Source: Mytilus trossulus (Eukaryota). From it: a stretch of 64,000 bases of DNA. The notes beneath the pieces were generated by a model. It made no database searches and had not been told where the DNA came from. It saw nothing but the letters and a program-made list of their open reading frames with translations. Made by a program: the position numbers and the translations under genes. The stretch is taken from positions 55,800,001-55,864,000 of the forward strand of contig NC_086379.1 in assembly GCF_036588685.1 (NCBI RefSeq), given 5' to 3'. The stretch's first letter is position 1, and each line of letters opens with the position of its first letter. Shown one piece after another: positions 15,021-51,826 of the stretch.

Positions 15021-15128
15021 CATATAGTAGAAAAGTGAAAGTATTTCCATCTTGTTCCACTCAAAGCATGCGTTTGACTCATTATTTGCAGGCAGAGTTG
15101 ATCTCCATCAATAAGTAAGCATACTTAC

Positions 15129-16660
15129 CCGGTGTTGATGAAGTTGCTGTAATATTTTATAGCAGAGTCTGTAAGAGATATAAGAAAGTCTGGAAACATA
15201 TCAGGGTTAGAACTATGTAAAGATTTTGTCTGCAATAAGTACAACATTCCGTCAACATCGATAGTTCCATTCATCCATTCATTGCCTTGCATAAATGTAT
15301 TTGCTGGCGATAACTCTGACCAGAAAGAAAGATAAACTTCCTTATTTGAATGTGTTTTTAAATGTGTATTCAGTAAATCTGTTACCGGTGCATATGTAAA
15401 GAAATCTCCTATTGCTCTAAGAACATTACGACTTTGCTCTTTTTCATCGCTAGACGAGTACCAGTCGCATATCATTTTTTTAAGGTCGTCTATTTTTGTG
15501 GTTTGATAAAATGGAGAGATGATATTTGGAATGTAATGATTGCACAACACAGTCTTTGGTACCTTCTGGTTTGTTTCAAAGTTATATTGACTTTGTAATG
15601 GTGCTAATTGTTCGTAAACATTGATGAAATTTTCATATTCAGATAACGTGCTCAAAACATCTACAGGTATTAGAGATTTAAAGTCAGTTGCAGGAAGAAT
15701 AAATTCATTGTCGACAACGGGTCCAAAATTATACCAAAATGTGTCCGAATAAGTGGAAACAACACCATTCGCAATGGACCCTTTTTCTAAAATTTCACTT
15801 TCAGTTTTAGACATTAAACAATCATATATTTGCTGTGAAGTAAACACCACACTATTTTGAGACGCATCGGGGCATAACTGATTTGCCAGAGTTTGTGAGT
15901 ATTCTTCTGCTTCTTTCCATATAGCCCCATGTGTATTAGCAACCGTAGAGAAAAGCATGATTCTTTGGAAGTTTCCAAAATTTAAAGGAGTGCTTGCTTG
16001 TAAAGTGGTACATAGTCCAGTAGATTGAAAGCCTCCTAATGTTATCCGAGATGGATCACCACCAAATGCTTGTATATTGGACTTAACCCATTCTATTGCC
16101 ATTTTCTGGTCCCATAATCCAAAGTTTCCAGGAATAACAGAATCCCCAGTTGACAGGAATCCGAACACACCCAATCGAAACGCTACAACTACGTTAATCA
16201 CGTCACCGTACAAAACTAAATCTGACGTTGGTAGAAGTCCTCTCTGACCAGACTCAAATTTTTCACCGGCAAACCAAATAACTACCGATTTGCTAGAAGT
16301 TGTGTCTGACACCGGAACAAATAAGTCTAGTAAAAGACAATCTTCACTTATATCTCCACTTGGGAGAAAATCGACCATCCAGTCGGCAATAACTTGGCTG
16401 CAAATTCTTCCCCCTGTTATTGTGCCGTCTATGATACCTCCCCAAGATTTCAGTGGTTTCGGTTTTTCGAATCTCTTTGGTGGTTCAGCATACGGAATCG
16501 CGATGAAACTTTGCACGGCTATGCCATTTGTATCCATCTGTAAACCTTTAATCTGTCCGAGTTCTGTCGAAACAATCACTTCAGTTGGTAAGCTAATTTC
16601 ACCAAGGGAATACACTGGATACAGCAAAAGAGCAAATAAATTCAAGATTCGTTTATACAT
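15129..16660 (-). CDS. Carboxylesterase-like gene A, main exon: signal peptide + type-B carboxylesterase fold, predicted catalytically dead (Ser->Gln, His->Asp)
   Basis: IPYAEPP, SEDCL, FRLGVFGFLSTGD, GNFGLWDQ, FGGDP motifs; ATG directly after acceptor ttttacag; donor gg|gtaagt at 15128. Confidence 0.93.
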
Positions 16661-30429: not shown

Positions 30430-30658
30430 CTATGATAATGATAAGCTTGATGCATTTGAGTTATACTTTTTACTATCTGTAACTATAGAAGACTGATCAG
30501 CTGTCGAGTTAAGGAGTTTAGGGATGTCCTTGAGCCAGAAATCTACTCGGTCTTTGTACATGTCTTTGTCAGATGATATGGTAACATCCAAAATCTGATA
30601 AGCTTTGTTACTCTGTGTATAGGGTGACCAGCTTGGAAGTTTCTCATCATTCGGATCT
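30430..30658 (-). CDS. Carboxylesterase gene B, terminal exon (GDPN..WSPY..RVDFW..SSLSLS*), no Thr stalk or hydrophobic tail
   Basis: Acceptor tttttcag at 30659; in frame with donor at 31274; TAG at 30430-30432. Confidence 0.88.
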
Positions 30659-31274
30659 CTGAAAAAAAGATAAACGGTTTAATGACACTCTAGGGATTAT
30701 TTTCAAGCGTGAATACTTTTTGTATTGATATTTTAATTCAAATTTTCATTTTACTTTTTTTTTGAAAGGTATTAATGCAGAAAGAAAATCAAAACAGGTA
30801 TCATTGGATATTTGTGGCGTCATCGAAAAGACCTTCAACGTGTTTCTGTGAAAAATGCCATACACTTTGGTCGATGTTCAAATGGTATTGTACCAACTAC
30901 CAGTGTTTGTCGGTATGAACCATATGTATTATATAGATATGTGTCTGCATGGTACATGCATCTGCTAAAAATATTCATTTATTTGTTCATTTATTTACTC
31001 TACCCTGAAGATGTATAATATTTGCCACTGGATGGTAAACAAGCGTCAATAAAGCAGTACATCCATACATATTGAAATCTCCCGTTTCAAATGCAAGATT
31101 AGACACCAACTTACTTAGATTATCAGTGCTTAAATGAAATTCGTACTTTTTTATGCACCAAATCGGCTTAATTTTATACAAGAAAGAAAGAAAACTGTCT
31201 AAACTTGCGCTCTGCAAACATTAATTTGGTTCCTTCTAATACCAAAGAAACTTTTTATCAAGATGTGTACCTAC

Positions 31275-32680
31275 CCGTATTTTGCAAAGTTGGTCCAGTA
31301 TTTCATCACAGTTAAGCTTAGTGTTAAATCTTCAGATGTGTTTGAAAGGAAGTCATAAAACGGAAAGAGCAATGGTATTTCTGATGCATGACTTGCTCCT
31401 TCAAACCACAATGGTATTCTTTTGCTGAGGATAGTTCTCTTGGTACTTAAATATTGAAATGTCTTTGATAATGGAGTTCCATCAGAGTGAAAATTTAACG
31501 TTTCAACCGTTTTACTGTAGAAATAAATATCCCCATAATAGTAAACGCTGTTCATACTGCGGTAAAGTCCTAAGGAATAACCATATTTTTGGCAAACAGC
31601 CGGTGCTATTTTAGTGTTGTTGTTGTAGTCGTCCAAAGCCATTGTTGTTGCTAAGTGATTACACAATACAGACCGAGGAATTCCGAGATCTATGTTAAAT
31701 CGGTATGCTTTCTGTAACCTTGTCAACGGATTACCAAGAAGTAAGGAGCCTTCAGAATTAACATTACCAACAATCATGTCCAGTGAACGGAAAAACATGT
31801 AAGCTTCGGAAGACCGGTTCTTCAGAAGAATTTTTGGGTGGTCCATAAGCAAATCTCGGTCTACCCTTGGTGCAAACACGAGAAAATCGTGAGGGTCTGT
31901 AACTGGTAAACTGTACAGGAAGTTGTATGCATTTTGGACATCAGCGGCCGATTTATTTTTCAGACATTTTATTTCTTCAGACTGCTGGGGAGACGTACAC
32001 TTTAAAACGTTTATAATCCTGTTCGTGTAATATGTTATATTAAATTCGGTTGCGACAAAGGAAGTGGAGACTCCGCTTTGTGCAATCACGCGGTTAAATA
32101 AACCTTTATTCTGTGGAATCAGGCTATGTAAAGAAACACTAAAACCGCCGGCAGATTCTCCAAATATAGTAACGTTACTGGTATCTCCCCCAAACGCTTC
32201 AATGTTGTCCTTAACCCATTCAATAGCCATTTTCTGGTCCCAAAGTCCATAATTTCCGACAGCATTTTCGTTCCCAGTACTTAGAAATCCAAAAACACCA
32301 AGACGGTAGTTCACTGTGACAATGATGACGTCACCGACTGATGCCATATATGCACCATTATATAACATTCCTGTGCCAGTAATATATGATCCTCCATGAA
32401 TCCAAATCATTACAGCCTTTTTGGCAGCGGACGACAATTTACTGGTTGGGACGTAGATGTTAAGAAATAAACAATCTTCAGATATGGTATAATTGTTAGG
32501 AATGAATCCACTAACTATTTCGGAAGGTTGTCCCTGAATACAAGCACTTCCAAAATATGTAGCGTTCAATGTTTGATTCCAGGAACCAAACGCAACAGGT
32601 TTTTGAAATCTTAGATCTCCCACTGGTGGTTTCGCAAATGGAATACGCCTGAATTCATTATAAGTGTAGTTTTGAGGACC
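31275..32680 (-). CDS. Carboxylesterase gene B, main exon 3' part: intact catalytic machinery (WIHGG, GESAG, NSEG, GASHASEI)
   Basis: Canonical type-B carboxylesterase motifs; donor gg|gtaggt at 31274; cut off from its N-terminus by a transposon; 582 aa when restored. Confidence 0.92.
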
Positions 32681-33404
32681 AATAACACGGGTGTCATTCG
32701 GTTTATCGAGAGAAATGAGCGTGAAAGAATATCTAACGGCGGTCAAGTATTGAGCGACGATCGTGAAAGCTCTGGTAACGGATCGTGAAAGACATTTAAT
32801 GGAAATTCTAGGTCAGAATCTTTTAAAATATCGCTTAATTTTCAAAACGCGGAACAAATCCAAACAAAAAAATATGTCTGTCAAAATGGTTTAACTTCCC
32901 AAACATTACTGTGAAATAAGAAAGAGAAAATATGCAGTACTTTATGAAAAAACACAAAAGGCGCAATGCATATCTATGAAATTAATTACAAATAACACGC
33001 TTTTTGTTACTATAATGGTCATGTTTCAGTTCATCGTGATATATTTGGAATTTAATCTTTGGTGTATCTGATAGTACAGTAAATTTAAGGTATGTTCTTC
33101 TCTTAAAAGCATTAATTTGTATATGAAAACCTTGAATTTGTTGAATATCCATCAAACTTTATCGTGAAAGATCAGGCAACGCATTATTTTGATCGTGAAA
33201 GATAATGCGTGACCAGACTTATTACTCGTAATCAGAAATCAGTATTTCTTTTACCATTTGATAAACCTGCAACTGGTTGAAACCTGTAACTATATATTTT
33301 GATAAGGATGACATTAAAGCTATTTTTTTTTATTCAACGCTTTACCTCGAAAGTTAAAAGAACAACAACTAAAACATCTCTAAATAAGTTTAGTTTAAAC
33401 ATAT

Positions 33405-33738
33405 TTATTTATAGTGGATTGGGAAACAAGTTTTGCAACTTATATTAATCCCTTTCCACTTTGCGGATGCGAGTGCTGCCTTGTAGCGGCATTAGCCTAC
33501 TCTTTTTCGAAATCTACAAGGGTGTCTTTAACGTGCAAGAGATATGGCTCTCTCTTAACACGGGTCAGCCATTTATTGTCCCCGTCCGACGGACTATCAT
33601 CGTTTCCTCAAGACCATACTCGCAAATGGTGTCAAGGGAGAGCCGAAAATTGATTTCCTGAAATTTTCATCCCAAACGGGAATCGAACCAGGAACCTTTG
33701 TGTAAGAAGTCCGATGCACTAACCACTACACCACGGCT
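33405..33738 (-). mobile_element. tRNA-derived SINE with Deu/Nin-like central domain, nested in the TIR element
   Basis: A box tggtgtagtgg and B box ggttcgattcc; body contains gcacgttaaagacaccc...ttcgaaaaagagtagg; related fragment at ~38495-38570. Confidence 0.75.
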
Positions 33739-34629
33739 TGAAAGATTTAGCTCTGAGAATCGGTCAAGTGCAATTCAGGCAGGCTGACACTATTTACCAA
33801 TAGCCAATAATATGGATATGCAACGTTTAAACCAAAATAATATCCATCAAACAAAAAATTACAGCAAAACAGCATCTTTCATGAGTAATTTGAGATTGAA
33901 CGATGACCAACATTTTGTGCAACAATACTTTCTTAAGTTCTGTATATACAACGCAGATGTGGATTGATTTAACTATATACTACAGACTATAGAATACCAG
34001 ATCGCAAATGCTGTAATGTCTCGTCTGCTTTACTTATGATAGTTAATTTTATGGAACGTCTATAATATCAAGGGTTTTACTAGAAGTGTCAAAATTAATG
34101 CGCTTAATGCGCTTAATGTATTTTTGTCCATCTGATGATTTAAGCCTTTTCAATTGATTTTTATAGTTCGTTCTTATGTTGTACAGTTATACCACTGTCC
34201 CAGATTCGGGGGAGGGTTGGGACCCCACTAACGTGTCTAACCCCGCCACATTGTTAATGTATGTGCCTGTCCAAAGTCAGGAGCCTGTAATTCAGTGGTT
34301 GTTGATTGTTTATGCGATACATTTTTGGTTTTCGTTTTTTTTTTTTTATACAAATAAGGCCGTTAGTTTTCTCGTTTGAATTGTTTTACATTGTCACTAT
34401 GGAGGCCTTTTATAGCTGACTAATAAATAAATCACTTCCAATTACTTTGCTATCTAATATCAGATTTTCTATATTTTTTAATGAATAGATATAACTTTAC
34501 ATGTACAAATATCTAAGTCGATGGAATATTATCCAACTCAACGAAAGGTGGGGAGAATCAGAGACGGTAAGGGCTTGAATTATTCGAGTTATATTTTACC
34601 CAAGCCTTTATATTAAGTTCTTAAAACTT

Positions 34630-34890
34630 ATTAATTAACTCTAGCATGTCTAGCTGTAGAATTTATAAATCAATGTAGCCGTAGAATTTATAAATTAATT
34701 CTGGCCGTATAGAATTTATAAAAGCTGTTCTAGAGTAGAACTGCCAGGATCAGTTCTAGGTAGAACTGTCCAAATCAGTTCTAGGTAGATCTGGCCAAAT
34801 CAGTTCTAGTTAGAACAGTTCTAACCTAGAACTGACTAAAAGGTGTCAGACTGACAGTTCTATGTACTGTTCTAGAACAGTTCTCCTGAC
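34630..34890. repeat. Short direct/inverted repeat patch (tagaatttataaa; cagttcta/tagaactg)
   Basis: Iterated motifs resembling subterminal repeats of another element. Confidence 0.6.
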
Positions 34891-35860
34891 AGATTTAATG
34901 AGAGGTTAGAAGTGATCTCCACTGTATATATCCAAAGGCTAGACAACATAAAACGAGCATTGCAGAAAGATGTATGAAAATGGGTTCAATGTCAGTTGAA
35001 ACCTTGCAGAAGTCGAAAATGTACACCTCACAATCATAACAACAGACACTTGTCCTAAAGCTTAACGAATCCGCGATACGGACTTGACCACAAAAATGAA
35101 TCTTCATCCATGAAATAAGGCAAATTCGGGGTCAGGTGAATCCTGTCTGGCGGACATGTAGTTTATAGGATCCAATATACCAAATGTGGGTATCCTATAC
35201 TTTATATTTATACTTTGAAAAGCTTAAACCTATTGAGGATGTTGAACTATATAGCTTTTCTCAATACCAATAACAAATATTAACTATGATATAATTGAAG
35301 AATAATTTGAACGTCTTCGTAGCATCGGGTCTTTCGCGATCCTTTTCACGATCTTCAAAAATACGGTATGTGATCTTTCACGATCCAAAAAAATCCATTT
35401 TTGTGTAATAGTTCTTTATTTACCAAGTTTCAGATTATGTTTATGCAAAATAACTATAAGAACCATTTGATTAATTCAAATAGAATGCCCTTATTCGTAT
35501 TAAACTAGGTTTTCTAGTCGAATTTGTGAAAAAATCATGTTTGTTTACATTTTTTATGTCATTGAAATATCGAGAAGCAATCTGCCTTTTGTTGTTTTGT
35601 AATAACTATGTACTTTTAAAACTCGATATTCTCACATACTAATCATAATGTTGAACCATTTTGACAGACAGTGTTATTTTGTCGTAAATTTGCTTCTGTA
35701 ATTTATTAAATTATAATATGTATTGACCTTTCATATGTCTTCTCGATTAAATGTCTTTCACGATCCGTTACCAGAACTTTCACGATCGTCGCTCAATACT
35801 TGACCGCCGTTAGATATTCTTTCACGCTCATTTCTCTCGATAAACCGAATGATACCCGTG

Positions 35861-35974
35861 AATAACCTTAGACTGGTGCAAGCCAGTTATTTTTCCTATT
35901 GGAGTATCTATGGTTACCGTGTTCTGACAAACTGCAAGCGACACATACATAACAAAAATGAGTAAATGCAGCAT
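35861..35974 (-). CDS. Carboxylesterase gene B, N-terminal 38 codons (signal peptide MLHLLIFVMYVSLAVC, then QNTVTIDTPIGKITG)
   Basis: Acceptor tttcag at 35985-35990; typical V-x-T-x-x-G-x-I-x-G start of the fold; in frame with 32680 once the transposon and one TSD are removed; not in the ORF track. Confidence 0.9.
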
Positions 35975-36214
35975 ACTGTTTTGTCTGAAATACAAATTAA
36001 TCGAAATGTGTTTGGATTATAGCGTCCCTTTGGGTTTTGTTCATTGTTGAAAGCCTTACGGTGACCTACATGTACTTACTACTTCCTTTGGTCTATCGTA
36101 GAGAATTGTTTCAGTGAGACTACGTCCCTCTTATTTTATATATACATATGTTATATGAATAATGCTGAATTTAAGGCGTTTCAAGGGTATAGGTAGTTAA
36201 ATTAGTTATATATA

Positions 36215-36456
36215 TAATTAAGAATTGAATGCTTCTTTTTGTAACTTTATTGGGTTGTAAAAGCGTTGACAAAAGTACATTTTGTATGAAGCGCTGAAGC
36301 ACTTCGTTCTAAAAATGTGCACACGGTCATCGCTTTTACAACCCTATAAAGTTACAAAAAGAAGCATTCAATACTTATAATTACATGTTTAGCTACTAGA
36401 ATCATGAAAACACGAATTTTATATAAAAAAATATTTAATTCACCTGTGCACTTTAT
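36215..36456. mobile_element. Hairpin-plus-tail repeat, copy 2 (tail truncated)
   Basis: Same palindrome as 12536. Confidence 0.8.
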
Positions 36457-42423: not shown

Positions 42424-42985
42424 TGAAATACTACTTGAAATACTCACCCTGTTTTGATGAAATAACTGTAAATTTGTGTAGTGGAGTCAGAAATGAAATA
42501 CTACTTGAAAATATTCACCCTGGTTTAATGAAGTTACTGACCATTTGTATAGTGGATTCAGAAATGAAATACTACTTGAAAACACTCACCCTGTTTTGAT
42601 GAAGTTACTGTACATTTGTATAGTGGATTCAGAAATGAAATACTACTTGAAAACACTCGCCCTGTTTTGATGAAGTTACTGTACATTTGTATAATGGATT
42701 CAGAAATGAAATACTACTTGAAAACACTCACCCTGTTTTGATGAAGTTACTGTACATTTGTATAGTGGATTCAGAAATGAAATACTACTTGAAAATACTC
42801 GCCCTGTTTTGATGAAGTTACTGTACATTTGTATAGTGGATTCAGAAATGAAATACTACTTGAAAACACTCGCCCTGTTTTGATGAAGTTACTGACTATT
42901 TGTATAGTGGATTCAGAAATGAAATACTACTTGAAAATACTCACCCTGTTTTGATGAAGTTACTGTACATTTGTATAGTGGATTC
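42424..42985 (-). repeat. 71-bp minisatellite (8 units) made of gene C's exon end + splice donor + intron start
   Basis: Donor positions recur every 71 nt: 42944, 42873, 42802, 42731, 42660, 42589, 42518, 42447. Confidence 0.95.
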
Positions 42986-44479
42986 TGCAAATGCTATAAG
43001 TTCTTGTGAAATAGCAGCTGGATCAATCGTTTGATAAGATTTAATTGCTAGTAAATATACAAGTGCGTCATTTTGGACAGTTCCGTCCATCCAGGTCAAA
43101 CTTGTGAGTATATCATCCAGTGGCGATTTTTGAGACCAAAGGCAAAGATAATTATTTTCACCGAGATTATAGTCGGTATGATCGTACATCAGCTCCGAAA
43201 TTGGTACATAATTATAAAAATCTCCAATTAATCTTAAAACATTACGGCTTTGTTCTGTGACGTCACTTGAGGTGTATCGATTGCATATGTTATTTATCAT
43301 CTGCTGTTTATTTTCTGGTGGCAAATGAGACTCAGCAATGGTTGGGACAACAACATCGCAAAGAACGGATTTCGGAATGTTCTTTGTTATGTCAAAATTG
43401 TATTGTGTTTGATAAGGAATTAGCTGTTCGTAAACCTTAAGTGCATGTTCGTTTTCAGATACTGTTGTCAATAGATCAACGGGTAGGATCTCTGTAAAGT
43501 AAAGATCTTTAATAAAATCGTTATCAAAAACTGGTCGAAAATCAAATTCAAGTTTCAATTTAGAAAACCCATTCGCGGTATCCACTGCTGTTTTTGTCTC
43601 ACTTATTAATTCTGCTTCAGTTTTAGAAGTTAAACAGTCATAAATTTCCTTAGATTGCAACCTAAATTTTGAATTGCTTGGACATAAAGCTCTTGTTAAA
43701 GCTCTCGCAATTGACATTATGAAGTCAAAGTTTTCCCCAACGACATTTCCATACAAATGAGAAACATCGGAATAAATCAAAAGTCTTTGAAAATTTCCGT
43801 CATTTAATTTATGATGTGCTTGTAGAGTGGCAGATACTGCACCGGCACCGAATCCTGCAAGTGTGATTTGATCAGAATCGCCTCCAAAGGCATTTATATT
43901 TGCTTTTATCCATTCTATTGCCATTTTCTGATCCCATAATCCAAAATTTCCAGGAATAAAAGAATCACCAGTTGAAAGGAATCCAAAAACACCTAATCGA
44001 AACGCTACAACTACGTTAATCACGTCACCGTACAAAACTAAATCTGACGTTGGTTGAAGTCCTCTCTGGCCAAACTCGAAGTTGTCTCCTGCAAACCATA
44101 TAACTACTGCTTTTTTGGTGATAATTTTTGTATTTGATACCGGAACGAATACATCTAGTAAAAGACAGTCTTCACTGACATCTGTACTTGGAAGAAAGCC
44201 TGCTAACTCTGGAACTATAGCTTGGCTGCATATTTTTCCTCCTGGTTGTGTGCAGTCTTTTGTGCCTACCCAAGATTTTACTGGTGTTGGTTTCTTGAAT
44301 CTTTCTGGGGGTTCAGCATAAGGAATTCCATAGAAACTTTGAAGAAACATGTTATTTATAGACGTGGACACTCCTTCTACACTCCCCGTTGTTGTTGTAG
44401 CAACCACAGTATTCATGCTTGATTGACTTTTAGACAACATAGGATACAACACAACCAAAAACACAACTCGAAAAAACAT
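42945..44479 (-). CDS. Carboxylesterase-like gene C, main exon; predicted catalytically dead (Ser->Gly in GFGAG, His->Gln)
   Basis: GIPYAEPP, SEDCL, GNFGLWDQ, FGGD motifs; ATG directly after acceptor ttccag; donor gg|gtgagt. Confidence 0.93.
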
Positions 44480-49168: not shown

Positions 49169-50330
49169 CTGTAATTAAATATAAAAGGATAAAAATAACA
49201 TTTATGTAAAAGTAAATATCAAACAATTCAAACATAAAAATGTAAAACTATACATTATTTATGTCATGCGTCCTAATCGCTTTTTCCTATTTATCTTCTT
49301 CGAGAACGCTTAAAACCAAATTTTTGAAAATCTTTATTTTGAATTTAAAATTTTGACTTTTGAAATCTCTAATTTCATTTTTTTCTATTCAAACACAGTT
49401 TAATACTATTCTGGAAGGAGTGGACATGGAAGCAAATAATTAAATTATATTCAAAAATGTTTTTTTATTCAATCATTACATGGATTAGCATTTAATATTA
49501 AAGAGTTCATTCGGTATAAGAACATGAATGTTGACAGAAAAAAATGTTGTTTCCCATGTTTTAGTTTCTACGACACTGTGATATTAAGTCGAAATTTCAA
49601 GGTACTAAAAGTCAATAGTAAGAACTTTGAGTTAAAGTCGATATTTTCAGATTTGAAAAACAAGTTTTTTTATGTGTACTATATCCCTAATACGCTTCCG
49701 TAGATGTCTTTTGTCCCTTAATCAATAACGAATCATAAAGCTATGATTTCACAAAAAAACAGACTTTATCAAAACCAATAACTTGGGATGAATAATGAAA
49801 ATTACAAACTGTAAACAATGTGATACCACTAGATAATAAATCATTCGAATTCAAAATACCAAACTGCATAACAGCAAAGAAAAGCAATTGTGATTGTATA
49901 CACTGTTGTTAAATTTGAGCATTTGGAAAATCTTAATGACTGTCAATTCACCACATATTTTTTGAGGATCCTACTTGATTGAACCAGTAAAACCTCCATC
50001 GACTTTGTCTCAGTATATTTTTTTATAAAGTCAGAATTTTACAGCATTAAAGATACAGACAACATAATCTTTGTAATGTAATCATGTCACTGAGCCGGAA
50101 GGATTTGCGCATGCCTTTCTGTACTTGTCTTTTTCAAAGTTTAAACTATCTTATTACCTACATTTACACGTATTATACTATAAAATTGAGAATGGAAATG
50201 GGGATGTGCCAAAGAGACAACAAACAACCTGACCATAGAGCAGACAACAACAGAAGGTCACCAACAGGTCTTCAATGCAACGAAAAATTCCCACGCCCGG
50301 AGGTGTAAATATATTTGATTTGATTCGTAC

Positions 50331-51826
50331 CCATAAACAACAAAATTACTCCAGTACTTCATGAATGTATCTCCCAGATTTGTTTCTTCTGCCTTGAAGG
50401 AGAATCCATAGTCTATGTTGATATCTTTCAATGATAAATATATAGTCGTTGTACCCGGCGAGGGTACCATGTTCCACACACTTTGAGCAAGATTGTCCAC
50501 AGGGTTGACAGCTGAAAACAATCCTAAAAATCTGCTGTTTTCAGTATTTGTCAAGTCATGGATTTTCAGCATATTTATGATAGGCGAATAATACAAGATA
50601 TCCCCGATCAGCCTAACAGCATCCCTGCTCTGTTCCACGGAATCACTTTTTGTATAAAAATTGCAAATTAGGTCTTTAAGGTCTTGTCTATTTTCAAAAA
50701 ATAGACTAACAATATGTGTAACTATTTTGTTACAAAGCACATCTTTTGGGACACCTTCGTTGACATTTATGTTGTATTCATTTTCAATTTCAGAGACAAA
50801 GGTCGTGAACTTTATCATTCCTTCGGCTGAAACACACAGACTTAAAACATCCACGGGGAGAATGGCGTTAAAATTTGCTGTTTCTGAAATGAAATCGTTA
50901 TCAATAACAGGACCCACAGCAAATCTCAATGATTTCGATGTTGGATAGATGCTATTTACTGCATCTAGAAGTTCTGTAGCTGGTTTTCTTACAAGACAAT
51001 CGTAAATTTGTTGTGACGTAAAATTAAAATCTCCAGACGACGTAGCTTGACAAGAGTGTTTTGCTAGCTTTTGAGCAAATTCTTCTGCATCTGTAACAAT
51101 AGCTTCCTTTGAATCCGGGAAACCTGAATGTACTATAATACGATGGATTTTGTCCTTGTTTAAAGAATGTGCTACCTGTAACCCGACAAATAAAGCACCG
51201 ATTTTTAGACCAGTCAATGTAATTCGGAAAGGGTCACCACCAAAAGCATGGATGTTTTCATTGACCCATTCTATAGCCATTTGTTGATCCCACAGACCAA
51301 AATTCCCAGGAATGACGTTATCTCCTGTCGACAAAAAACCAAATATATCAACTCTGAAAGAAACATACACAAATATAGCATCGCTGTATAACCCTAAGTA
51401 TTTAAAAAATGTATAAACTGATGTTTGTGCGGTTCGAAAATCTCCTGGTATCATTATGACAACGGGCTTTTTGTTGTGTTCTGATAAAGATCTTGGGACA
51501 TAAATATCAACGTATAGACAGTCCTCGGTGAGTTCTGAGTTTTGAAGCTGTTGTTTCAATTGGTCAGAAATAGCCTGCATACATAGTTTTCCTGGGTTCA
51601 TTGCATTCAATGTAGAGTTCCATTTATTAGACATTTTTTGTGGTTTCTTGAACCTTTCAGGCTGCTCTGCATACGGAACTCCATAAAATCGATAGATTTT
51701 CGCTCCATTGAATGGTATTTCCTTACCCATTACTACACCAGATGGCGTGTTAACAGTTACTGGAATTTGACAATTCAGTGTGTCAAAAAGAATAGCAATA
51801 ACTACTATCTCAAAAACACGTAACAT
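50331..51826 (-). CDS. Carboxylesterase-like gene D, main exon; predicted catalytically dead (Ser->Lys in GLKIG, His lost)
   Basis: GVPYAE, TEDCL, GNFGLWDQ, FGGDP motifs; ATG directly after acceptor tttcag; donor gg|gtacga at 50330 (ORF track reads into the intron). Confidence 0.92.

What the first reader, a model, noticed from the sequence alone, without database searches (positions are those of the whole stretch)
32681..35865. Recent Transib/RAG-like insertion interrupts the only catalytically intact paralog
Seen: 115-bp TIRs differing at only 2 positions, CAC/GTG termini, an exact 5-bp TSD (AATAA), and insertion after codon 38 of gene B. Read-through hits TGA at the 11th codon inside the element, while the rest of B has no lesions. 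Established: CAC ends with 5-bp TSDs characterise Transib and RAG-like transposons, whereas Chapaev has 3-4 bp TSDs. The end CACGGGT departs from the RSS-like heptamer, and the TIR is long. Inference: a recently mobile, possibly undescribed family; this is probably a segregating null allele of a secreted esterase, and an autonomous partner should exist elsewhere in the genome.
Basis: partly seen in the sequence, partly recalled or inferred. Interest (0 to 1): 0.85.

Follow-up and report, generated by a model that had tools for sequence, protein, structure and literature searches.

The report
Polymorphic transposon insertion breaking a mussel esterase
A 3.2-kb non-coding "cut-and-paste" transposon from a family of 300 or more copies sits in the first exon of a mussel carboxylesterase gene. 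Other mussels, and probably the sequenced animal's other chromosome, carry the uninterrupted gene, so this is an ordinary unfixed knockout allele, and its Transib/RAG-like label remains unproven.

Summary
Window 32686-35860 is a 3175-bp element with 118-bp terminal inverted repeats (3 mismatches), CAC...GTG ends and an exact AATAA duplication. It lies after codon 38 of a minus-strand carboxylesterase gene, and read-through stops at TGA in the 11th element codon.

It belongs to a non-coding family with 615 matching termini in this 1.3-Gb Mytilus genome. Twenty of 21 copies have perfect 5-bp duplications.

Contigs from four public runs, covering three mussel taxa and including the possible source sample, join 32680 directly to 35861. 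The M. galloprovincialis ortholog reads straight across the site. The insertion is therefore not fixed.

"Recent" cannot be read from the repeats, because two of the three mismatches are fixed family differences. The copy itself is of average age for the family.

Transib/RAG-like membership rests only on the 5-bp duplication and the CAC ends. Targets are AT-rich (22% GC) rather than GC-rich. There is no nonamer, the repeats are long and carry 11-bp subterminal motifs, and I found no transposase.

Other first readers in this scan noted similar CAC-ended, 5-bp-duplication elements elsewhere in this genome. None had been followed up.

Verdict: real, mostly ordinary, superfamily unproven.

The parts
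32681..32685 (.). Left copy of the 5-bp target-site duplication (AATAA)
   Evidence: The empty-site joint 32680->35861 in four runs shows a single copy in uninterrupted alleles.
32686..35860 (+). Non-autonomous DNA transposon, 3175 bp, with no ORF longer than 84 codons
   Evidence: It is closest to the 3.7-kb subfamily (96-97% identity over the ends).
32686..32803 (+). Left terminal inverted repeat, 118 bp, starting CACGGGTG
   Evidence: The first 32 nt match 615 places in the genome at up to 2 mismatches and none in the reversed control.
35743..35860 (-). Right terminal inverted repeat, 118 bp. One private change (repeat position 8, G to A) and two family-wide left/right differences (positions 85 and 116).
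35861..35865 (.). Right copy of the target-site duplication (AATAA)
32717..33201 (+). Five direct copies of an 11-bp subterminal motif (GATCGTGAAAG or one mismatch), starting at 32717, 32759, 32781, 33160 and 33191. These are candidate transposase-binding sites.
   Evidence: Motif scan. The same positions recur in other copies.
35331..35829 (-). Six inverted copies of the same 11-bp motif, starting at 35331, 35343, 35375, 35755, 35777 and 35819
33392..33737 (-). Nested 346-bp very high-copy short repeat. By eye its head looks tRNA-like, but the tools did not call it. It is absent from the 20 other copies examined.
   Evidence: gap in all other copies. Its junction is unique among the scored genome matches. 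Contig depth is very high. ARAGORN and Rfam found nothing.
35861..35974 (-). Gene B exon 1, first 38 codons, signal-peptide-like (MLHLLIFVMYVSLAVCQ...). The last codons overlap the duplicated AATAA.
   Evidence: It aligns with the N-terminus of the M. galloprovincialis protein P0001.
35828..35830 (-). Premature TGA, the 11th codon inside the element in the gene's frame
31274..32680 (-). Remainder of gene B exon 1: 469 codons, carboxylesterase domain with the GESAG serine and the catalytic histidine, and no lesions
   Evidence: Pfam COesterase, E = 1.5e-115. Alignment A1. 97% identical to P0001.
30500..30658 (-). Start of gene B exon 2 (GDPNDEKLPSW...), after an intron with its GT at 31273 and its AG at 30659
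   Evidence: It matches P0001.

Best explanation
This is a non-autonomous cut-and-paste DNA transposon, one of about 300 copies of a Mytilus family defined by 118-bp inverted repeats ending CAC...GTG. The family also carries 11-bp subterminal repeats over about 520 bp at each end and makes a 5-bp target-site duplication.

A transposase supplied in trans presumably binds the repeats and motifs, cuts at the CAC ends and integrates with a 5-bp stagger. The preferred target looks like C|WWWWW|G, with an AT-rich duplicated pentamer.

This copy landed after codon 38 of the only catalytically competent gene in a four-gene carboxylesterase cluster. It causes a stop 11 codons later, so the allele is a probable null. 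The insertion is unfixed: uninterrupted alleles exist in the same species, in related species and probably in the sequenced animal itself.

Shown here: the element, its family, the duplication, the empty allele and the truncation.

Inferred: loss of function, which transposase is involved, and the chemistry. My odds for the superfamily are about 0.55 Transib/RAG-type, 0.15 an atypical CACTA/Chapaev-type relative, and 0.3 some other or undescribed transposase.
For: Repeats, duplication and stop codon.

Family: 309 + 306 termini at up to 2 mismatches in 32 nt, against 0 in the reversed control. There are 21 complete copies of 2.5-8.6 kb, and 20 have perfect 5-bp duplications of differing sequence. 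None has coding capacity, and the longer copies are explained by nested insertions.

Symmetric 11-bp motifs.

Target bias: C just 5' of the duplication in 13 of 21 copies, G just 3' in 12 of 21, and 22% GC inside it.

Empty site: the joint 32680->35861, skipping 3180 bp, appears in all four runs. A 1715-nt contig (same species label, different sample) and a 1960-nt contig (another taxon) span it.

Ortholog: P0001 from M. galloprovincialis reads ...KVI|GPQNY... without a break.

Gene B is single-copy in this assembly.

Catalytic residues are kept only in gene B within the cluster.

Literature: 5-bp duplications and CAC ends characterise Transib and RAG-like elements (PMC1131882, PMC7204232).
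Against: No transposase was tied to these ends. A Pfam RAG1 search of the genome gave only a 13.5-bit noise hit, although the tool's controls rang nowhere, so this is weak negative evidence.

No element shares the outer 20 nt of the repeat with a different continuation, apart from damaged copies and a 4-copy fragment. None shares the inner 20 nt with a different interior.

Transib, RAG and RAGL duplications are reported as GC-rich (PMC1131882, PMC10629977), whereas these are AT-rich. No AA core of a nonamer lies at 12±1 or 23±1 bp spacing (sequence). The end does not fit the protostome RAGL consensus CACTWMCAAACKTYKBB beyond CAC (PMC7204232). A survey of bivalve genomes found a single Transib-type transposase (PMC10294476).

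Loss of function is untested. In-frame GT/AG pairs inside the repeats could in principle splice out most of the element.
Confidence: 0.8

Rival explanations
1. The family is not Transib/RAG-type. It is mobilised by a different cut-and-paste transposase, such as an atypical CACTA/Mirage/Chapaev relative or an undescribed lineage, that happens to make 5-bp staggered cuts at AT-rich sites.
For: CAC ends combined with arrays of subterminal repeats in both orientations are classic En/Spm-CACTA anatomy (the family comparison is from my own knowledge). Targets are AT-rich rather than GC-rich (versus PMC1131882 and PMC10629977). The repeats are very long and lack a nonamer. No RAG1-type match was found. 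Transib transposases are nearly absent from surveyed bivalves (PMC10294476).
Against: The 5-bp duplication is reported as unique to Transib/RAG among eukaryotic cut-and-paste superfamilies (PMC1131882). CACTA/Chapaev elements make 2-4 bp (my own knowledge). Ginger2 makes 4-5 bp but is reported with TGT...ACA-type ends (PMC10045372 for the length; the ends are from my own knowledge). HzTransib repeats also lack a nonamer match (PMC4840297).
Confidence: 0.4
2. The insertion is not a null allele. The element is removed from the transcript as an intron, using a GT in one repeat and an AG in the other, leaving a 19-44 aa in-frame insertion after the signal peptide.
For: A donor CGG|GTATCA lies 5 nt into the element. 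Three AG sites lie 47, 86 and 122 nt from its far end. Each pairing gives an open in-frame product. An earlier scan note raised the same idea.
Against: The donor lacks the consensus at +4 to +6 and the acceptors have poor pyrimidine tracts (read from the sequence). There are no RNA data, and an insertion beside the signal-peptide cleavage region may still impair the protein.
Confidence: 0.1
3. The empty-site contigs reflect excision (somatic or germline) of an older, once common insertion, rather than the ancestral uninterrupted allele.
For: In the possible source sample, the empty-site contig matches the window letter for letter over 481 bp of the left flank. The copy itself is not young.
Against: The joint is exact, with a single AATAA and no footprint, in four samples from three taxa. 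The M. galloprovincialis reference protein is also uninterrupted. Independent precise excisions would be needed, and hairpin-type excision normally leaves footprints (my own knowledge).
Confidence: 0.04
4. The filled allele is an assembly artefact, with a repeat copy wrongly placed into the gene.
For: The element is high-copy. I saw no listed contig bridging the filled junctions, but only a few of more than 100,000 rows are shown.
Against: A misjoin would not create a perfect 5-bp duplication of the target exactly at intact CAC...GTG ends. This copy also has private features: a nested repeat, deletions and 26 singleton substitutions.
Confidence: 0.02

Closest known systems
Non-autonomous Transib elements (TransibN families of insects and sea urchin; Kapitonov & Jurka 2005, PMC1131882)
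   Same: Precise 5-bp target-site duplication. 5'-CAC...GTG-3' ends. Many non-coding copies that depend on a rare autonomous source. A flanking-base target preference of the c-NNNNN-g type is reported for some families.
   Different: The heptamer is CACGGGT, against the consensus CACAATG. There is no A-rich nonamer at 12/23 spacing. The repeats are 118 bp, against a roughly 38-bp conserved terminus. There are arrays of 11-bp subterminal repeats. Targets are AT-rich rather than GC-rich. No Transib transposase has been linked to it.
RAGL-B transposons of oysters and mussels (Martin et al. 2020, PMC7204232)
   Same: Bivalve hosts, CAC ends, invariably 5-bp duplications, and non-autonomous derivatives.
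   Different: The terminal 17 nt do not fit CACTWMCAAACKTYKBB, as there is no AAA at positions 8-10. No RAG1L/RAG2L gene pair was found. That paper found RAGL in Modiolus and Bathymodiolus and never mentions Mytilus.
En/Spm-CACTA and Chapaev (CMC) elements
   Same: CAC ends, and short motifs repeated in direct and inverted orientation over several hundred bp at both ends.
   Different: Those superfamilies make 2-4-bp duplications (my own knowledge). This family makes 5 bp in 20 of 21 copies.
Presence/absence and insertion polymorphism in Mytilus genes
   Same: A gene-disrupting structural variant segregating in a highly polymorphic mussel genome.
   Different: Here the cause is a defined transposon insertion with base-level breakpoints, not a whole-gene presence/absence difference.

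Membership tests
Transib / RAG-like transposons | 5-bp target-site duplication | tested here: met
   Twenty of 21 copies are perfect and one has a single mismatch. The empty site carries a single AATAA.
Transib / RAG-like transposons | Termini 5'-CAC...GTG-3' | tested here: met
   All 21 copies. 615 termini in the genome.
Transib / RAG-like transposons | RSS-like heptamer (CACAATG / CACAGTG) | tested here: inconclusive
   CACGGGT matches the invariant positions 1-3 and 4 of 7 overall (consensus from PMC1131882).
Transib / RAG-like transposons | A-rich nonamer 12 or 23 bp from the heptamer | tested here: not met
   No AA at nonamer positions 5-6 for spacers of 11-13 or 22-24 bp (sequence). HzTransib also lacks a nonamer match (PMC4840297), so this feature is not strictly defining.
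Transib / RAG-like transposons | GC-rich target sites | tested here: not met
   The duplicated pentamers are 22% GC and the flanks 40%. GC-rich targets are reported in PMC1131882 and PMC10629977.
Transib / RAG-like transposons | An autonomous partner encoding a RAG1-core-type DDE transposase | tested here: inconclusive
   Pfam RAG1 found nothing in the genome, but the tool's controls were also silent. No ORFs in 21 copies. Further genome fetching was blocked.
Protostome RAGL-B transposons | Terminal consensus CACTWMCAAACKTYKBB with AAA at positions 8-10 | tested here: not met
   Positions 8-10 here are G, T, C (consensus from PMC7204232).
CACTA / Mirage / Chapaev (CMC) | 2-4-bp target-site duplication | tested here: not met
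   5 bp in 20 of 21 copies.
CACTA / Mirage / Chapaev (CMC) | CAC ends with subterminal repeat arrays | tested here: met
   Five direct and six inverted 11-bp motifs lie within about 520 bp of the ends.
hAT | 8-bp target-site duplication | tested here: not met
   The longest flanking direct repeat is 5 bp in every copy.
Ginger2/TDD | 4-5-bp duplication with TG...CA-type ends | tested here: not met
   The length fits (PMC10045372) but the ends are CAC...GTG.
Carboxylesterase type B (host gene) | COesterase domain with the GESAG serine and the catalytic histidine | tested here: met
   Pfam PF00135, E = 1.5e-115. Alignment A1.

The most novel reading that the evidence does not exclude
The abundant CAC-ended, 5-bp-duplication elements of this mussel are driven by a transposase that is not a canonical Transib or RAG1-like enzyme. 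It would be a lineage that recognises long repeats with 11-bp subterminal motifs and integrates at AT-rich C|WWWWW|G sites. That would explain why such elements are common while surveys find almost no Transib transposases in bivalves.
Probability: 0.2. Interest if true: 0.65.

Novelty: new member of a known kind. Interest (0 to 1): 0.35.

Why it matters
This is a clean example, resolved to the base, of a transposon insertion that is still unfixed and knocks out the only catalytically equipped gene in a small esterase cluster. It could serve as a marker and as a natural knockout.

The wider question concerns the family. It is large, has intact ends and shows the two sequence hallmarks shared with the ancestors of the V(D)J recombinase, yet it prefers the opposite target composition and has no visible enzyme. 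Finding its transposase would show either that Transib/RAG-type enzymes were active recently in Mytilus or that another enzyme makes the same 5-bp signature. If the latter, that signature would be a weaker diagnostic than is assumed.

Tried and rejected
1. Pfam RAG1 (PF12940) against the whole genome gave nothing at E <= 0.01 and one 13.5-bit noise hit at E <= 10. The tool's controls also rang nowhere, so this says little.

2. ORF and Pfam scans of the long copies (4.6, 4.7 and 8.6 kb) and of all fetched loci found no transposase. The extra length is nested unrelated sequence.

3. A pattern for the outer 20 nt of the repeat followed by a different continuation gave 17 hits. All were damaged family copies, apart from a 4-copy fragment that proved to be a small duplication.

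4. A pattern for the inner 20 nt of the repeat followed by a different interior gave 0 hits.

I did not try to get around this.

7. The metagenome scan for the terminus found one 1.3-kb contig holding just another family end.

9. ARAGORN and Rfam did not call the nested repeat.

10. Searches of earlier scan notes by sequence and by terminus were blank.

11. The HzTransib papers (PMC6872938, PMC3414642) are not held. My recollection that its repeat starts CACGGTG is therefore unverified and is not used as evidence.

12. I rejected dating the insertion from repeat identity. I also rejected reading contig depths as copy numbers.

Full report
**Observation**

The stretch holds an inverted repeat with arms at 32686-32803 and 35743-35860. 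The arms are 118 nt long and 97% complementary. The element between them begins CACGGGTG, ends CCCGTG and is flanked on both sides by AATAA.

On the minus strand an ATG at 35974 opens 38 codons (MLHLLIFVMYVSLAVCQ...KVI). These run into the element, read ten more codons and stop at TGA. Below the element the same frame resumes at 32680. It continues as an unbroken 469-codon exon that matches Pfam COesterase at E = 1.5e-115. A GT follows at 31273, and a second exon starts at 30658.

**A real transposon family**

The first 32 nt of the repeat match 309 forward and 306 reverse places in the 1.3-Gb genome at up to 2 mismatches. The reversed control matches none.

I fetched 20 further copies. All have both ends, 2.5 to 8.6 kb apart. 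Nineteen have a perfect 5-bp flanking duplication, each of a different sequence, and one has a single mismatch. In no copy does the flanking direct repeat exceed 5 bp.

The basic unit is about 2.8 kb, and a second subfamily is about 3.7 kb. The longer copies differ only by nested insertions. None has an ORF above about 120 codons. The pieces I scanned match no transposase family.

Both ends carry an 11-bp motif (GATCGTGAAAG). There are five direct copies within 520 bp of the left end and six inverted copies within 530 bp of the right end, at the same positions in other copies. I take these to be transposase-binding sites. That is an inference.

Targets are biased. C lies immediately 5' of the duplicated pentamer in 13 of 21 copies and G immediately 3' in 12 of 21. 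The pentamer itself is 22% GC, against 40% in the flanks.

**The insertion is not fixed**

I laid contigs of four public runs on 32200-36300. They were the possible source sample, a second sample with the same species label, and one run each from two other mussel taxa. All four contain a joint from 32680 to 35861 that skips exactly 3180 bp, which is the element plus one AATAA. A 1715-nt contig and a 1960-nt contig run straight across it. This also proves that AATAA is a target-site duplication.

The closest database protein is a 604-aa carboxylesterase of Mytilus galloprovincialis, 97% identical. It reads ...KVI|GPQNY... with no interruption at the insertion point.

Gene B occurs once in this assembly, and the nearest paralogs are at most 68% identical at the DNA level. 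If the first run really is the source animal, that animal carries both alleles. Its empty-site contig matches the window letter for letter over 481 bp of the left flank. That fits a young insertion on that haplotype. Contigs cannot prove zygosity, so raw reads are needed.

**What does not follow**

Of the three mismatches, those at positions 85 and 116 are the same left/right differences in all 20 other copies. Only position 8 is private to this copy.

Over 1381 aligned bp of the two ends, this copy is 3.0% from the family majority and has 26 singleton substitutions. Both values are average for the family. It also has a private 346-bp nested repeat whose junction occurs nowhere else among the scored genome matches.

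The copy is therefore not young. Because cut-and-paste elements move as physical copies, that does not date the insertion event. Only the population data speak to the event's age.

Contigs matching the family's repeats and interior are abundant in the runs of all three taxa. The family therefore looks older than their divergence.

**The host gene**

Four carboxylesterase paralogs lie on the minus strand of the window, with large exons at 15125-16660, 31274-32680, 42941-44479 and 50258-51826. Only gene B keeps the GESAG nucleophile and the catalytic histidine. The others have Q, G or K at the serine position.

"The only catalytically intact paralog" is thus true within this cluster. Many other Mytilus carboxylesterases exist at 45-50% identity.

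The truncated product would be 48 aa, so a null allele is the likely outcome. This is untested. A weak GT five bases into the element can pair in frame with AGs 47, 86 or 122 bases from its far end. Each pairing would add 19-44 residues without a stop. I give that rescue about 10%.

**Superfamily**

A 5-bp duplication and CAC ends are the published hallmarks of Transib and RAG-like transposons, including those of bivalves (PMC1131882, PMC7204232).

Several things argue against a simple filing:
- The heptamer matches only 4 of 7 positions.
- No nonamer core lies at 12 or 23 bp. HzTransib also lacks a nonamer match (PMC4840297), so this weighs little.
- The end does not fit the protostome RAGL consensus beyond CAC (PMC7204232).
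- The repeats are three times longer than the conserved Transib terminus.
- The subterminal repeat arrays recall CACTA elements.
- Targets are AT-rich, whereas RAG, RAGL and Transib targets are GC-rich (PMC1131882, PMC10629977).
- A survey of bivalve genomes found a single Transib-type transposase (PMC10294476).

Other superfamilies fail on duplication length or on end sequence (PMC10045372, and my own knowledge for CACTA and hAT).

I could not find the enzyme:
- The Pfam RAG1 search was silent, but so were the tool's controls.
- No second family shares the outer or the inner part of the repeat.

I put Transib/RAG-type at about 0.55.

**Earlier notes of this scan**

Several first-reader notes describe CAC-ended elements with 5-bp duplications elsewhere in this genome. 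One claims a RAG1/Transib-like gene on another contig. None had been followed up and none gave coordinates I could use. A note on this same stretch proposed the splice rescue, which I checked at the level of reading frames only.

**Verdict**

This is a real, well-delimited and unfixed insertion of a non-autonomous transposon that probably inactivates a carboxylesterase allele. It is ordinary as a phenomenon. It is modestly interesting because the family combines the Transib/RAG signature with atypical ends and targets, and because no partner enzyme is yet visible.

Noticed in passing
window 15125-16660, 42941-44479, 50258-51826 (minus strand): Three neighbouring carboxylesterase paralogs keep long open exons, and one matches Pfam COesterase at E = 2.5e-84. 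All three have lost the nucleophile serine (Q, G or K) and the catalytic histidine. They look like conserved non-catalytic esterase-like proteins rather than pseudogenes.
   Followed up: partly
window 36219-36377: A 52-nt inverted repeat (94% complementary, 55-nt loop) lies about 250 bp upstream of gene B's start codon. It looks like a small hairpin-forming MITE in the promoter region, and contig depth there is very high.
   Followed up: no
window 34118-34391: A stretch that belongs to the backbone of every family copy is itself an extremely abundant repeat in all four runs. The element's interior is therefore a patchwork of other repeats.
   Followed up: partly
window 32200-32680: Contigs of two other samples and the M. 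galloprovincialis protein lack one codon here (IPNNTISEDC versus IPNNYTISEDC in the window). This is an in-frame Tyr indel between alleles or species.
   Followed up: partly
G000 C11:65903242, C21:1683301, C21:2945864, C75:639350: Four copies of a fragment resemble the first 22 nt of the repeat but begin CAAGGG and continue with an unrelated shared sequence. This is probably a small segmental duplication holding a dead end of the family.
   Followed up: partly
L047 2398-8159 (G000 C6, inside an 8.6-kb family copy): A 5.7-kb nested insertion carries a string of short minus-strand ORFs (for example ...SDTDVLVLCVHYF...). It looks like a decayed gene of another mobile element. Pfam gave nothing significant.
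   Followed up: partly
L021, L040 (flanks of other family copies): Reverse-transcriptase-like ORFs of 414-612 codons lie next to two family copies. These are unrelated retroelements.
   Followed up: no
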